DNA from: Guillardia theta CCMP2712
Lineage: Eukaryota; Protista; Cryptophyta
Length of the DNA: 64,000 nucleotides
Direction of reading: 5' to 3'
Assembly: GCF_000315625.1 (NCBI RefSeq)
Contig: NW_005434667.1
Span: 921,061-985,060, forward strand
In this document: piece after piece, positions 1 through 62,298 of the stretch
How the letters are laid out: the number at the start of each line of letters is the position of its first letter
Numbering within the stretch: position 1 is the first letter of the stretch
Position numbers and translations under genes: made by a program
The notes under the pieces: model-generated
Seen by the model: only the letters and a program-made list of their open reading frames with translations
What the model was told of the DNA's origin: nothing
The model's database searches: none

Positions 1-837
1 CAACAACTCCCACCTGGACCCCGTCTTCGACAGAGCTTTCTCCAGCTTCATGTTGTGCTCCACGAGGTTCTCGATCTCTGCCGCTGCGTTCGCAAGATTC
101 TCCGTCGCGTTTCTCAGCTCGTCCTCCAGCTCTCTCAGCCTGTGCGCAACAGCGCGATCACACTCCCTCCCTCCTCTCCCTCCTCGTCACCTCGCGCGAG
201 CCTCCTGCAGCTCAGCGCCCTCCTCCTGCCGGGACGGGAACTCAGGAGCAGGGATCCTTATCGACGCCCCTTCCTTGGCTGTCTCGAAGGTTGGCGTCTG
301 ATCTGGGGAGCCTTCTGATCCGCTCTTGGAGTACACAAAGGACGGGCTCACGTCGCTCTCCTCCTTGGACACGTTCGAGAGCTTGCAGTCAGCGTCCTCC
401 TGCTCCTTCGCCTCCACCAGCCATGCCCATCTGAATCCCCTCCTGCTCTTGCGATCTGCCTCCACCCGCATCAGCTCTGTCAACCGCCCGAGCTCGAAGT
501 CCGAAAGGTTCTTCCTCCTCGTCTCGTCCGGTGCCTCCTCCGCTGGTTCCGATAGTTCTTCATCGCTCTCAGAGTGCACTGCTGTCTTCAATGCTGTGGA
601 ATCGTCTGAGGAGGAAGAGTCTTCCAGCAGAAGCGCTCCCCTCATCGCAGTCGTCAGCCATGTTCGCCTCCTCCTGGCCTCCGTGAACACATTTGAAGTC
701 ATCCTCGACGAAGAGGACGTGGACTTTGATCGCTTCTTCTCTTGCAGAGCGAGTGCATGAGGGTCAGGACTTACCACGGGTATCCGGGGAGCCAGCGACA
801 GCGGTTCATGAGGGCTTCCCTCGTCGTCAGAATCCAT
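1..837 (-). CDS. Hypothetical acidic/low-complexity protein, 5' part; continues off the left edge
   Basis: ORF from ATG 837 (MDSDDEGSPHEPLSL...), probable short GTAAGT intron near 740-775; coiled-coil-like text (EGAELQEARAR). No recognisable domain. Confidence 0.6.
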
Positions 838-1277
838 GGCCTGATGATGAAGGTGGTTAGGTTACAACTTTCCGATCACACAATCTCATTCCCTTGCTCT
901 CCCCCCCCAGCTGCGATATTTCGCCTTCGACTCCTACTCATTGATTGACGGATCGCCCCGAGACCTGATTAAAGGATCCCCGATGCACTCGACGGTGCCT
1001 GGGCTATCATCCGGAGTCATCATGTGGCTCACGGCATTCGGTAAGGAGAAGCTAAATGAGTCGAGGGAACTTTTTCATGCTGCAAGCAACTTGTGTTTAG
1101 CTATCTCTTGGTGGCGCCGTCTCTGTGGTGCTCCATGAGTTTTAATGCATCTGTTGCTTCCGAATGTCTCTCTTGCTGCAGTTCCCTCCTCAAAGAGAGA
1201 TGGAGGTGGTAACTTGCGGAAGACCATCAAGAAAAAACGCCTCCTTGGAGTATTTAATCTCCTCCATTTTCCTTTTC

Positions 1278-1377
1278 NNNNNNNNNNNNNNNNNNNNNNN
1301 NNNNNNNNNNNNNNNNNNNNNNNNNNNNNNNNNNNNNNNNNNNNNNNNNNNNNNNNNNNNNNNNNNNNNNNNNNNNN
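1278..1377. other. Assembly gap (100 N)
   Basis: Run of N next to CT-rich low-complexity sequence. Confidence 0.99.
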
Positions 1378-1777
1378 TCCCCCTCCTCTCTCTCTCTCGC
1401 CCCTCTCCTTCAGTTCTCTCCCTCTCTGGACCTCTCCCTCCCCTTGACTCCCTCCCTCCCTCCCTCCCTCCCTCCCCTCTTCCGCTTCCGTCTCGCCCGG
1501 CCGGCGCCATCAAATTTCGGAGACCGGTCAACGGACTCTTTCCTGTAGTTCTCCAACTCGAGATCTGAGTGGGTAGGGGTACTGATCGTACCGGTCATAT
1601 AAATATCTAAAACACCGGTATGATTGAAGTACATTGGGGTCATCATGACCCTACCCCAATCTGTAATGTGAAGGAGGGTGACAGGCTGGCAGGAGAGGGT
1701 AGGGGTCAATTGTACCAGAAATCATGAGACTTGGAAGGGTGGGTGGCGGTTATGTGTTACAAAAGTGGGGTGGGTGG

Positions 1778-59900: not shown

Positions 59901-60866
59901 AACTGACGCTCCTTCTCCTCGATCACCCTCTGAAGCTTCTCGTTCTCTTCCCCTTTAGCCCTCATCTGCAGCACCAGCGCCATCTGGTCGCTCTTTACTT
60001 GATCGATCAGATTCTTTGTGTCCGTTAGAGCTGAATCCTTGGCGAGCTCCGCGTCCTGCTCATGTCTCACTCCCTCCTCCTCCCCAGCTCTTCCCTCGGG
60101 ACCTCGAGCTTGTCCTTTGCTTCCTCCGCAATGCTCAATGCTCGCAGCTGCCCATCCTGTGCCTGATTTCAAACCATGTCACCTTACACCCAGCATATCC
60201 CCAGCAATCTACAGCCTCACCGCCTGCACTTTCTCCTTGAGATCTTTCGCATTTCTCTGCGCTTCCTCATACGCAAGTTTGAGCTGGCAAGAAAGTCATG
60301 GAGATCCGCCTCTTCTCCATCATCCCGACAGTCACCTGAGCACGAAGTTCGAGCTCCGAGTCTTCGTAGGAAGACAGCAAACTTCTGATGTGCGTTCGGA
60401 TGTACGAGAGGATCACCTTCAAGAACTCCATCACAACCTGTCTGCAAGAATTGACAATATCTCACCATCGGATTCGCCTTGTTGAGCGCGCGATGCTCTG
60501 CTTCCATTTCCTCGGACTGGAACGGCAAATGTCAGGACTCCTTGCTGTGCCCTCAGATTGCAGTCGCAGATTCATCACCACTGTCAGCGCCTTCCTTTCC
60601 TTGATCTCGATGAACAGGGACACGAGAGCTGCAGAAATTGAGTGCAACAACTTCTGCTCCGTGCTCCCTCTGTCCTTTTGTGCGAGCAGCTCAGCATACT
60701 TTGTCCGCTGGGATTGAACTTCCTTCTCATGGGAAGAGATTAGCTCACGAACCCGACTCTGAAGAGACTCTTTCTCGAACTGCAGTCGTTCAATCAGCTT
60801 CTTGTTTTCTAGCGCCTCCAGTTTCGATGAGCTCTGTTTGCCTTCCTTCTTCTCCTTCCCCTCCAT
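56967..60866 (-). CDS. Long coiled-coil protein
   Basis: MEGKEKKEGK...IERLQFEKESLQSRVREL; many heptad exons; last exon ISRPSSALRK...RPSSAIPGNA*. Confidence 0.75.
59731..59759 (+). repeat. Interstitial telomere-like (CCCTAAA)n tract, about 4 units, intronic, followed by (CCT)n
   Basis: aaaccctaaacccctaaaccctaaaccct. Confidence 0.85.
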
Positions 60867-61319
60867 TTTCGAACGAGCAGCAATCTATTCCGGCGAGTTT
60901 CACAGCGAAGCGGCGATCCCAATTGTCAGATCTTGAGTCTTATGAAGCATTGAGCCTGAGGTCACCTCTAAGTACATATCAGAGCTCTCATCTCTCATCT
61001 CATCGTCGCTGCCTCTCCTCCTCGCCATCTTCTATCGCCAGCTCCCATCGACCGCATTTCGACTCGCCCTCCCGACATACATGGGACCGTTGAAACTCAT
61101 CACCCTCCTTCACCAGTTGTGCCCCTCGTCCCCCTGCTCGTCCCCATTCAACTCCGAGCCTGCCTCAGCTGCAATTCCGACTACCCAGTGGGGGGTCCTT
61201 AAAGTTACGACGGATTCAGTACGGGTCCATTGACAATCAAATATACGGGTACATAGTTACATTTAACAAAACGAGGGGGTGGGGTTAGGTTTCGGATGCG
61301 GGCTACTTGGCGGGAAGCC

Positions 61320-62298
61320 ATGGGAGGACGAGGCGCTCTGATTGTGCTGGAGGGACTGGACAGGTCAGGGAAGTCGACTCAGGTACGAGAAGTATGCTGT
61401 GTCCTGCGATAGCCACCTCTTGAAGTATGCTGTGTCCTGCGATCGCCACCTCTTGAAGTATGCTGTGTCCTGCGATCGCCACCTCTTGAAGTATGCTGTG
61501 TCCTGCGATGGGGTATCCCTTGTGTGGAGGAAGTGGAAGGCGTCATGGAGGAGCGAGTGCTCCTAACATACATCGTCTAGGTGATCCGGCTCGTAGAAAA
61601 GTTGGTTTCCATGGGAAAGAAGGCCTCGAAAATGAATTTCCCAGACCGAACTACGACGGTAGGGGGTCTTATCAACGAGTACCTGCAGAGCGGGAAGGAC
61701 TTGGGTAACAGTTGGGTGCATGCGACATACTGTGATTCTGCTTCAGATGACGCCGTAATCCACCTGCTCTTTTCTGCCAATCGCTGGGAAGCCACGAGAT
61801 CGATTCGCGACCGCCTCTCATCTGGAGAGACCTTGATTGTAGATAGATACGCGTACTCTGGTGTGGCCTTCAGTGCCGCCAAGGGGACGCTGGACATCGA
61901 ATGGTGCAAAGGCCCAGACAGGGGTCTACCAGCACCAGACTGCGTCATTTATCTTGATGTCTCTTCGGTATGCAGCATTGTCATGCTGATATGAGACGTG
62001 CTCTTGATCTCGCCGCCAGGATGTTGCAAAGCAAAGGGGGGGGTACGGAGAGGAACGTTACGAGAAAGAAGAGTTCCAAAAGAAGGTCTGCAATGTTGAA
62101 TGATTCCATGCGAAAGAGATGAAAGGAGTTTAGGTGCGAACCTGCTTCGAAGCATTGATGTCACAAGAGCCTGCAATGTGGAGACGAGTGGATGCAAACA
62201 AGACTATGGATGAGGTCACCGAAGAGATTGAAGGGATTGCCACAAAAATCGTTGACCAAGTGACCGACAAACCTATCGGCTCACTGTGGACGAAATGA
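61320..62298 (+). CDS. DTYMK: Thymidylate kinase (dTMP kinase)
   Basis: RGALIVLEGLDRSGKSTQ, FPDRTT, IHLLFSANRWE, VDRYAYSGVAFS, GLPAPD, RGGYGEERYE. Confidence 0.97.
61389..61509 (+). repeat. 33-bp minisatellite, about 3.6 copies, in TMPK intron 1
   Basis: Unit gaagtatgctgtgtcctgcgatcgccacctctt. Confidence 0.95.

What the first reader, a model, noticed from the sequence alone, without database searches (positions are those of the whole stretch)
1..62298. Strict strand alternation of about 28 consecutive genes (all head-to-head or tail-to-tail)
Seen: after manual splicing the gene order reads -,+,-,+... with no tandem pair from the first gene to TMPK, i.e. 27 switches in a row. With independent random orientation that has probability 2^-27. 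Convergent stop-to-stop gaps are mostly about 70-280 bp; divergent gaps are about 80 bp to 1.6 kb. Inference: the genome is organised as bidirectional-promoter gene pairs with shared or overlapping terminators, the opposite of the unidirectional arrays known from kinetoplastids and dinoflagellates. Caveat: the unbroken run relies on several small hypothetical genes (1778+, 19139+, 19782-, 30142-), although long stretches (e.g. LON to PUB/UVR, and PDZ to TMPK) rest on better-supported genes.
Basis: partly seen in the sequence, partly recalled or inferred. Interest (0 to 1): 0.8.

Follow-up and report, generated by a model that had tools for sequence, protein, structure and literature searches.

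The report
Genes alternate strands in cryptophyte genome

Summary
The window is Guillardia theta nuclear scaffold C7:921061-985060. I rebuilt the gene map from RNA contigs (one 6-kb stretch), Pfam, cross-species homologues, a related metagenome contig and a self-trained HMM.

It gives 22 supported genes, not about 28. Of 21 junctions, 19 change strand (p = 1e-4). The unbroken runs are 10 and 11 genes long. The two same-strand junctions are the two spacers that hold the assembly gaps.

The claim of 27 switches in a row fails:
- RNA joins several ORFs into single genes (46748-51563 +, 54002 to about 56900 +).
- The ORF 57053-57640 + is antisense to conserved minus exons.
- 19139+ lies inside a minus block.
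- 1778+ and 30142- have no support.
- One small gene that fills a gap, 12085-12558 (-), is real, with a Hanusia phi homologue.

RNA shows convergent neighbours with overlapping 3' ends. GGGGTAY is enriched and lies almost only in head-to-head spacers.

An independent 200-kb sample (scaffold C1) holds two solid tandem pairs: ClpB/PreP, and a giant gene followed by a thiamine gene with its own TPP riboswitch. Alternation is therefore not obligatory. My rough estimate of the switch rate is 0.75-0.9. Other first readers noted the same pattern on other pieces of this genome, unverified.

It is a new member of a known kind (Nannochloropsis, PMC3566019).

The parts
1..861 (-). Gene 1, unknown protein. 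Its 3' end may run off the window.
   Evidence: ORF hexamer score 87.5, above the reversed-decoy maximum of 55. No Pfam match.
1835..2480 (+). Its first ORF is an E/Q low-complexity repeat.
   Evidence: HMM scores 17 and 43; shuffles of this spacer gave no call, but shuffles of the other spacers reached 30-82. No Pfam match. GGGGTAY sites at 1576 and 1784 lie upstream.
2759..6366 (-). MLH1 mismatch-repair gene, one multi-exon gene.
   Evidence: Pfam Mlh1_C at 2762-3214 and 3616-4032, and HATPase_c_3 at 5615-5959, collinear on the minus strand.
6263..7472 (+). Seven-exon candidate gene, known from my HMM only.
   Evidence: HMM scores 74-153; all six introns are 45-64 nt. No Pfam match. Decoy calls reach similar scores.
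7735..9005 (-). NIPA-type magnesium transporter.
   Evidence: Pfam Mg_trans_NIPA, E = 7e-54.
11205..11930 (+). EF-hand protein.
   Evidence: EF-hand Pfam matches, all below Pfam's own cut-offs. ORF score 74.
12085..12558 (-). 157-aa membrane protein, a small gene that fills a +/+ gap.
   Evidence: Hanusia phi homologue at 63% identity and a metagenome relative at 97%. My HMM missed it.
13855..14765 (+). Unknown protein.
   Evidence: ORF score 99.6. HMM scores 59-64.
14845..19768 (-). Minus block holding the large gene with a weak EEP-domain match and its upstream exons.
   Evidence: ORF score 305. Weak Exo_endo_phos match. Minus-frame third-position substitutions at 19028-19315 and 18277-18446. 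Whether this is one gene or two is not settled.
21173..23546 (+). Protein with a LON substrate-binding domain.
   Evidence: Pfam LON_substr_bdg, E = 5.5e-21.
24763..27463 (-). Ankyrin-repeat gene. My HMM gives two kb apart.
   Evidence: Ankyrin Pfam matches at 24766-25023. HMM scores 47-96.
27727..29441 (+). Gene with a UVR motif.
   Evidence: Pfam UVR at 28172-28834. ORF score 59.
29442..31504 (.). Unresolved +/+ spacer holding assembly gap 30672-30771.
   Evidence: No ORF has support.
31505..34469 (+). PDZ and coiled-coil gene, about 15 exons.
   Evidence: HMM scores 236-288. Sub-threshold PDZ matches. Short introns with a CTGAC-type motif near their 3' end, seen by eye.
34731..35807 (-). 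Unknown protein.
   Evidence: ORF score 79.
36371..38130 (+). Class I (Trp/Tyr type) tRNA synthetase-like gene, one gene.
   Evidence: Weak, sub-threshold tRNA-synt_1b matches in two exons in collinear order.
38354..39253 (-). Methyltransferase-like gene.
   Evidence: ORF score 76.6. Weak Methyltransf_25 match.
39949..44758 (+). One 1452-aa membrane glycoprotein gene.
   Evidence: Two introns of 52 and 45 nt join the two long ORFs, and the Ala/Val/Gly-rich sequence continues across the junction. ORF score 257.
45308..46347 (-). Repeat-cassette gene.
   Evidence: ORF scores 58, 54 and 26 on one strand. HMM scores 86-95.
46748..51563 (+). AP-complex large subunit (adaptin), one gene.
   Evidence: Pfam Adaptin_N, E = 6e-92. 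The RNA contig's loose end at 50924 matches the exon at about 50755-50789. + RNA reads lie at 51300-51900.
51631..52737 (-). RsfS (ribosomal silencing factor) gene.
   Evidence: Pfam RsfS. An RNA contig joins 51473-51660, 51708-51832 and 52441-52737; the skipped stretch I read begins CT and ends AC, a minus-strand intron.
52902..53162 (-). Weak acidic low-complexity ORF. If it is a real gene, it is in tandem with RsfS.
   Evidence: HMM scores 35-37, within the shuffled null. Low RNA depth at 53100-53299 only.
54002..56900 (+). Coiled-coil gene. RNA contigs begin at 53784-53851. The 3' end is approximate.
   Evidence: 15 listed GT..AG joints of 42-57 nt, open reading frame through all of them.
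56970..60866 (-). Coiled-coil gene. Exons from 56970 to 59381 are mapped. The extension to 60866 is inferred.
   Evidence: A 442-aa protein (main exons 100% identical) and a 64%-identical relative map to minus exons. The length of the RNA contig fits the longer gene.
61296..62298 (+). Thymidylate kinase.
   Evidence: Pfam Thymidylate_kin, E = 9e-22.

Best explanation
The window is ordinary protein-coding nuclear DNA of Guillardia theta in which gene orientation is strongly non-random. Genes tend to sit as head-to-head pairs around a promoter spacer of about 0-2 kb and as tail-to-tail pairs whose stop codons lie about 70-550 bp apart and whose 3' ends overlap.

Shown here:
- The excess of strand switches among supported genes in this window.
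- The overlap of convergent transcripts at two junctions.
- The enrichment of GGGGTAY in head-to-head spacers.
- Genuine tandem pairs elsewhere in the genome.

Inferred:
- The bias extends over the genome at a switch rate of roughly 0.75-0.9.
- It is kept by selection in a compact genome. Two genes can share one promoter region, and tail-to-tail placement avoids read-through into a downstream promoter.
- It is the same kind of layout as described for Nannochloropsis.

It is a statistical preference, not an obligatory architecture.
For: - Curated map: 19 of 21 junctions switch, p = 1.1e-4.
- RNA: single spliced + genes at 46748-51563 and 54002 to about 56900, and minus introns in RsfS. Contigs bridge the 67-bp convergent gap at 51563/51631. 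Reads of + RNA run past the minus stop.
- A small gene on the opposite strand that the pattern predicts is real: 12085-12558 (-) has a Hanusia homologue. In the C1 sample, 106296-107108 (+), convergent with the thiamine gene, also has one.
- GGGGTAY: 17 sites against 4.7 expected, 16 of 17 in 15% of the window.
- Both same-strand junctions hold an assembly gap.
- Other first readers noted the same pattern on other pieces of this genome. These notes are unverified leads only.
- Precedent in Nannochloropsis.
Against: - Only 6 kb could be checked with RNA. Several blocks rest on my own HMM, whose calls on a reversed decoy reach scores of 60-210.
- Some blocks could hide two same-strand genes: 24763-27463, 14845-19768 and 56970-60866.
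- The likelihood scan of the switch probability peaks at 0.6-0.65, only about 1 log unit above 0.5. The scan is biased low, because the HMM splits single genes that RNA or Pfam shows to be whole.
- The C1 sample has two solid tandem pairs and about ten further unresolved same-strand neighbours.
- Roy 2017 reported no departure towards same-strand neighbours but did not report a deficit.
Confidence: 0.68

Rival explanations
1. Artefact of gene calling. Orientation is essentially random (switch rate about 0.5). The alternation appears because same-strand exons or genes are merged into one gene and weak ORFs on the other strand are accepted in the gaps.
For:
- The weak genes score like shuffled sequence.
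- The HMM likelihood peak at 0.6-0.65 is not significantly above 0.5.
- Using only strong HMM calls in the C1 sample, my hand count gives about 50% switches.
Against: - In the window the single-gene status of key blocks has independent support: RNA joints, collinear Pfam domains (MLH1; weak tRNA-synthetase matches), or sequence continuity across the junction.
- Among neighbours less than 0.7 kb apart I count by hand 12 opposite pairs and 1 same-strand pair, and the latter is probably one gene.
- Two HMM-weak opposite-strand genes chosen for test both had Hanusia homologues.
- 19 of 21 has p = 1e-4.
Confidence: 0.12
2. Strict, obligatory alternation across the genome. Every apparent tandem pair hides an undetected gene on the other strand.
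For: - The two same-strand junctions in the window coincide with assembly gaps.
- Small genes missed by my HMM do exist.
- Many first-reader notes report near-strict alternation elsewhere in the genome (unverified).
Against: - ClpB and PreP are both on the minus strand and about 1 kb apart. No ORF in the spacer has coding signal, a Pfam match, a tRNA or an Rfam match.
- The giant gene's strongly coding last exon ends at 110851. The minus-strand thiamine gene begins, with its own TPP riboswitch, at 110341-110441, which leaves at most about 410 bp.
Confidence: 0.05
3. A local feature. This window happens to be unusually alternating while the genome average is only mildly biased (0.55-0.65).
For: - The C1 sample looks less regular than the window.
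- With hundreds of windows scanned, some long runs are expected by chance.
Against: - At the level of raw HMM calls the C1 sample gives a switch fraction (0.57) close to the window's (0.61). In the window that raw value corresponds to a curated value of about 0.9.
- Tight convergent partners within 200 bp are seen at many strong C1 genes.
- The pattern was noted independently on other pieces of the genome.
Confidence: 0.15

Closest known systems
Alternating divergent/convergent gene orientation in Nannochloropsis gaditana and other photosynthetic stramenopiles (Jinkerson et al. 2013, PMC3566019)
   Same: [quoted passage not shown] Runs of alternating genes reach 15 there, against 10-11 supported here. 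Spacers are short, often under 1 kb. Bidirectional promoters are the proposed reason.
   Different: The lineage differs (cryptophyte, not stramenopile). G. theta is not mentioned in that paper's text. Here genes are intron-rich with 42-57 nt introns, and convergent 3' ends demonstrably overlap. No reporter test of a bidirectional promoter exists for this genome in what I could search.
Bidirectional promoters of head-to-head gene pairs (yeast, human, Arabidopsis)
   Same: Two genes are transcribed away from one short spacer.
   Different: In those genomes such pairs are a minority (about 10% of human genes, per the abstract of PMC5572396 listed). Here most genes appear to be so paired. The one spacer with RNA contig ends on both sides is about 1 kb wide, at the usual upper limit of the definition.
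Convergent genes with overlapping 3' UTRs (Saccharomyces, PMC6993858)
   Same: Tail-to-tail genes lie a short distance apart and give complementary 3' ends.
   Different: Any regulatory effect through mRNA duplexes is untested here. Here it seems to be the usual way a gene ends.
Unidirectional gene arrays of kinetoplastids and dinoflagellates (PMC5177918)
   Same: Strongly non-random gene orientation at chromosome scale.
   Different: The sign is opposite: there are few orientation changes there and many here. G. theta has spliced-leader trans-splicing but no operon signature (PMC5619915).

Membership tests
Alternating divergent/convergent gene organisation (as in N. gaditana) | Fraction of neighbouring genes on opposite strands clearly above 50% | tested here: met
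   In the window 19 of 21 junctions switch (17 of 20 without the HMM-only gene), p = 1e-4 to 1e-3. In the independent C1 sample the result is inconclusive: 0.57 for raw calls, about 0.75-0.95 after curation.
Alternating divergent/convergent gene organisation (as in N. gaditana) | Long runs of consecutive alternating genes | tested here: met
   Runs of 10 and 11 supported genes, against a maximum of 15 reported for N. gaditana.
Alternating divergent/convergent gene organisation (as in N. gaditana) | The preference holds genome-wide on annotated gene models | not testable with these tools
   The genome's own annotation is withheld and only 200 kb outside the window could be fetched.
Bidirectional promoter pairs | The two transcript starts lie less than about 1 kb apart on opposite strands | tested here: inconclusive
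   RNA contig ends put the RsfS start near 52737 and the + gene start at 53784-53851, about 1.05 kb apart. Other spacers are known only from start codon to start codon: about 0-700 bp for six of them, 1-2.2 kb for five.
Bidirectional promoter pairs | One spacer drives transcription in both directions, or the two genes are co-expressed | not tested
   This needs a reporter assay or expression series. Only the shared GGGGTAY motif was seen.
Convergent overlapping transcript pairs | RNA of both genes covers the same DNA at their 3' ends | tested here: met
   A contig is continuous over 51349-51660, across both stop codons. + RNA reads reach 51700-51899, past the minus stop at 51631. The 4.5-kb contigs of runs X2 and X4 continue from the + gene into the minus gene at 56.9 kb. 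A contig is not a single molecule, so the overlap is inferred from contigs and stranded reads together.
Strict (obligatory) strand alternation | No tandem same-strand neighbours anywhere | tested here: not met
   ClpB/PreP, and the giant gene followed by the thiamine gene with its TPP riboswitch, in the C1 sample.

The most novel reading that the evidence does not exclude
Guillardia theta, and perhaps cryptophytes in general, has a genome-wide switch rate of 0.85 or more. Tail-to-tail genes routinely end inside each other's 3' UTR, and head-to-head pairs share spacers marked by GGGGTAY. Tandem placement would then be actively selected against, for example because termination or insulation is weak. 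This would be more extreme than anything reported for stramenopile algae.
Probability: 0.4. Interest if true: 0.65.

Novelty: new member of a known kind. Interest (0 to 1): 0.45.

Why it matters
If the bias holds across the genome, gene orientation in this model cryptophyte is under strong constraint.
- It would bear on how transcription starts and stops in compact algal genomes.
- It would affect gene prediction. A prior on strand alternation, and awareness of antisense shadow ORFs in low-complexity DNA, would both improve models.
- It would affect the design of expression cassettes, through paired promoters and terminator choice.
- It would bear on whether overlapping convergent transcripts feed small-RNA pathways.
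- It would extend a layout known in photosynthetic stramenopiles to a separate lineage with a red-algal plastid. That raises the question of convergence or common cause.

Tried and rejected
- **Public annotation.** The genome's own records are withheld (look-up of encoding contigs). Exact look-up of ten single-exon ORFs found none, controls included, so it says nothing.
- **Self-trained HMMs.** Full retraining drifted towards spurious tiny genes and lost real ones. Holding the exon model fixed and giving introns an explicit length distribution worked better. It still splits genes that RNA or Pfam shows to be single, and a reversed decoy gives 32 calls with scores up to 212. Scores under about 100 therefore prove nothing.
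- **Scoring introns alone to read the strand.** RNA-verified introns score poorly and both strands look alike.
- **Likelihood scan of the switch probability.** It used two intergenic states. The peak is at 0.6-0.65 and values of 0.9 or more are disfavoured. It is biased low by gene splitting, so it is not decisive.
- **Poly(A) signal search.** I found no common signal in convergent gaps.
- **Pfam on contested small ORFs.** No matches.
- **Bridging the second assembly gap.** A metagenome scan for a relative's contig found nothing.
- **Literature.** I found no paper on G. theta nuclear gene orientation. The genome paper is not held.
- **Rfam and tRNA scan of the window.** Nothing found.
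Full report
**Identity and setting**

The window is G000:C7:921061-985060 of an assembly of 87,145,349 bases in 669 contigs. A protein search from the neighbouring sample returned [quoted passage not shown] on a contig of 1,423,878 bases, which is the length of scaffold C1. 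The window has about 50% G+C, two N runs at 1278-1377 and 30672-30771, and no tRNA or Rfam match. The genome's own annotation is withheld from the tools, so I had to build the gene map myself.

**The main risk in the observation**

If same-strand exons are merged into one gene, and weak ORFs on the other strand are accepted wherever two same-strand genes meet, alternation follows by construction. I therefore looked for gene boundaries from evidence that does not depend on the strand pattern.

**RNA evidence**

Only one call on 6 kb (50900-56899) was allowed.
- Contigs of three RNA runs show one spliced + transcript. It begins at 53784-53851 and runs beyond 56899, with 15 listed GT..AG joints of 42-57 nt and 13 more that were not listed.
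- Spliced through these introns, the reading frame from the ATG at 54002 stays open for 489 codons. ORFs that a reader or a gene finder would call separately (54002-54574, 55741-56157, 56190-56564) are therefore one gene.
- A second contig leaves the stretch at 50924. Its loose end matches the exon at about 50755-50789. Reading the sequence shows a chain of + introns from 50296 to 50925. The adaptin gene (Pfam Adaptin_N, E = 6e-92) therefore runs from 46748 to its stop at 51563. The RGG-like minus ORF at 50357-50920 is an antisense shadow of low-complexity DNA.
- The next gene, RsfS, is on the minus strand. The skipped stretch 51661-51707 begins CT and ends AC, and two further minus-strand introns can be read from the sequence alone. 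The gene ends at 51631 and begins near 52737.
- The two stop codons are 67 bp apart. The contig is continuous across them.
- The raw-read run places its first mates on the minus strand at 56700-56899, where the introns show a + gene. The same orientation at 51300-51899 therefore means + RNA running past the minus gene's stop. This is direct support for overlapping convergent 3' ends.

**Protein evidence in the window**

- Pfam identifies MLH1 on the minus strand in three collinear pieces from 5959 down to 2762. It is one gene of about 3.6 kb.
- Pfam also identifies NIPA (-), an EF-hand protein (+, matches below Pfam's cut-offs), a LON-domain protein (+), an ankyrin protein (-), a UVR-motif protein (+), and thymidylate kinase (+). 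Weak, sub-threshold matches to a class I tRNA synthetase fall in two collinear exons (+), and sub-threshold PDZ matches fall in the gene at 31.5 kb.
- The 157-aa ORF at 12085-12558 (-) lies between two + genes and my HMM missed it. It has a 63%-identical homologue in Hanusia phi and a 97%-identical one on a metagenome contig. This gap-filling small gene is real.
- The 280-aa ORF at 57649-58488 matched a 442-aa protein and a 64%-identical relative. Mapped back, these proteins use minus exons from 59381 down to 56970. The + ORF 57053-57640 is therefore antisense to real minus exons.
- The remaining length of the 4.5-kb RNA contigs (about 2.45 kb beyond 56899) fits one minus transcript that also contains the coiled-coil exons up to 60866. 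That last step is an inference.
- The two long + ORFs at 39949-41064 and 41081-42907 are joined by introns of 52 and 45 nt, and an Ala/Val/Gly-rich sequence continues across the junction. They form one 1452-aa membrane protein.

**The contested small genes**

- For each spacer I ran a permissive version of the HMM and compared the result with shuffles. The best calls score 13-43, while across these spacers shuffled sequence reached 30-82. None has a Pfam match.
- For 17.7-20.1 kb I found two genomic metagenome contigs about 92% identical to the window.
- Substitutions in the minus ORF 19028-19315 fall 3, 3, 10 over codon positions, and 0, 4, 8 in 18277-18446. In the + ORF 19139-19255 they fall 5, 2, 1.
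- The stretch is therefore minus-strand coding. 19139+ is not supported, and 19782- lies in the same minus block as the large gene with the weak EEP match. Whether that block is one gene or two is open.

**Resulting map**

There are 22 supported genes and three weak candidates. The strand order of the supported genes is - - + - + - + - + - + + - + - + - + - + - +.
- 19 of 21 junctions switch (p = 1.1e-4). Without the HMM-only gene at 6263-7472 it is 17 of 20.
- The two same-strand junctions, 861-2759 and 29442-31504, are exactly the two spacers that hold the assembly gaps. They are unresolved, not shown to be tandem.

**A motif in head-to-head spacers**

GGGGTAY occurs 17 times against 4.7 ± 2.2 expected, and no shuffle of 100 reaches 17. 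Sixteen of the sites lie in head-to-head spacers, which make up 15% of the window (p about 1e-12). The motif also clusters upstream of ClpB and of PreP in the C1 sample. It therefore marks regions upstream of genes, not head-to-head spacers as such.

**Independent sample (C1:200001-400000)**

- ClpB (77468-80407) and the presequence protease PreP (81390-84736) are complete, unrelated proteins, both on the minus strand. The spacer of about 1 kb has no ORF with coding signal, no Pfam match, no tRNA and no Rfam match.
- A ThiM/ThiD/ThiE fusion gene (107249-110400, -) carries a TPP riboswitch at 110341-110441 (-). It follows a giant minus gene whose last exon (ORF score 143) ends at 110851.
- These are two genuine tandem pairs, so alternation is not obligatory.
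- A dynein heavy chain that my HMM split into three calls is one gene by domain order. Two weak opposite-strand calls gained Pfam support (PDZ and a Myb match at the cut-off) and one a Hanusia homologue.
- At the level of raw calls the switch fraction is 0.57 in C1 and 0.61 in the window. In the window the curated value is about 0.9. By that scaling C1 lies near 0.8, with bounds of 0.75-0.95 from my hand curation.
- A likelihood scan over the switch probability peaks at 0.6-0.65 and disfavours 0.9 or more. It inherits the gene-splitting bias and is a lower bound.

**Comparison with what is known**

- Jinkerson et al. [quoted passage not shown] They say it is shared with other photosynthetic stramenopiles and suggest bidirectional promoters and compaction as reasons. 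G. theta is not mentioned in that text.
- Roy (PMC5619915) found spliced-leader trans-splicing in G. theta without an excess of same-strand neighbours. He did not report a deficit.
- I found no paper that describes gene orientation in the G. theta nucleus.
- From memory, the published annotation has about 24,800 genes in 87 Mb, or 3.5 kb per gene. I could not check this. The window's 22-25 genes in 62 kb are somewhat denser than that.

**Verdict**

There is a strong orientation bias with overlapping convergent transcripts, and no strict rule. It is a new member of a known kind. The genome-wide number is the key missing figure, and anyone with the public annotation can compute it directly.

Noticed in passing
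window 18660-19140: This single-copy stretch has only 4 substitutions in 480 nt against a roughly 92%-identical metagenome relative, while its flanks are 7-15% diverged. It has no Pfam or Rfam match. It lies in the minus block upstream of the gene with the weak EEP match. It may be a very constrained exon set or a non-coding element.
   Followed up: partly
window 1576-62040 (17 sites); C1 sample, e.g. L009:738-767: GGGGTAY is enriched 3.6-fold and lies almost only in head-to-head spacers. It also clusters upstream of ClpB and PreP. It is a candidate promoter-region element of G. theta.
   Followed up: partly
L012:341-441 (-): A TPP riboswitch (RF00059, 65 bits) lies at the 5' end of a ThiM/ThiD/ThiE fusion gene in the C1 sample.
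   Followed up: partly
L014:1594-3624 (-): One 677-aa ORF joins the C-terminal half of a TRM1-type tRNA methyltransferase domain to a beta-helix/NosD region.
   Followed up: no
L021, L022, L023 (ENA samples ERZ930071 and ERZ930064, project PRJEB17505): Genomic metagenome contigs about 92% identical to the window over 1.3-2.4 kb. They come from a close relative of G. theta and are useful for comparative tests of coding.
   Followed up: partly
window 52733-52740: The RsfS RNA contigs end 4 nt upstream of the start codon, directly after a CAG on the minus strand. This looks like a spliced-leader acceptor site.
   Followed up: no
window 50357-50920 (-), 57053-57640 (+), 1829-2044 (+): Long open frames arise from GAG/CTC-type low-complexity DNA. 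At least the first two are antisense to real exons. Such ORFs are a trap for gene calling in this genome.
   Followed up: yes
L012-L013 (C1:310851-329664, -): My HMM calls one gene with about 17 kb of coding sequence and a TIG domain. I did not check whether it is one gene.
   Followed up: no
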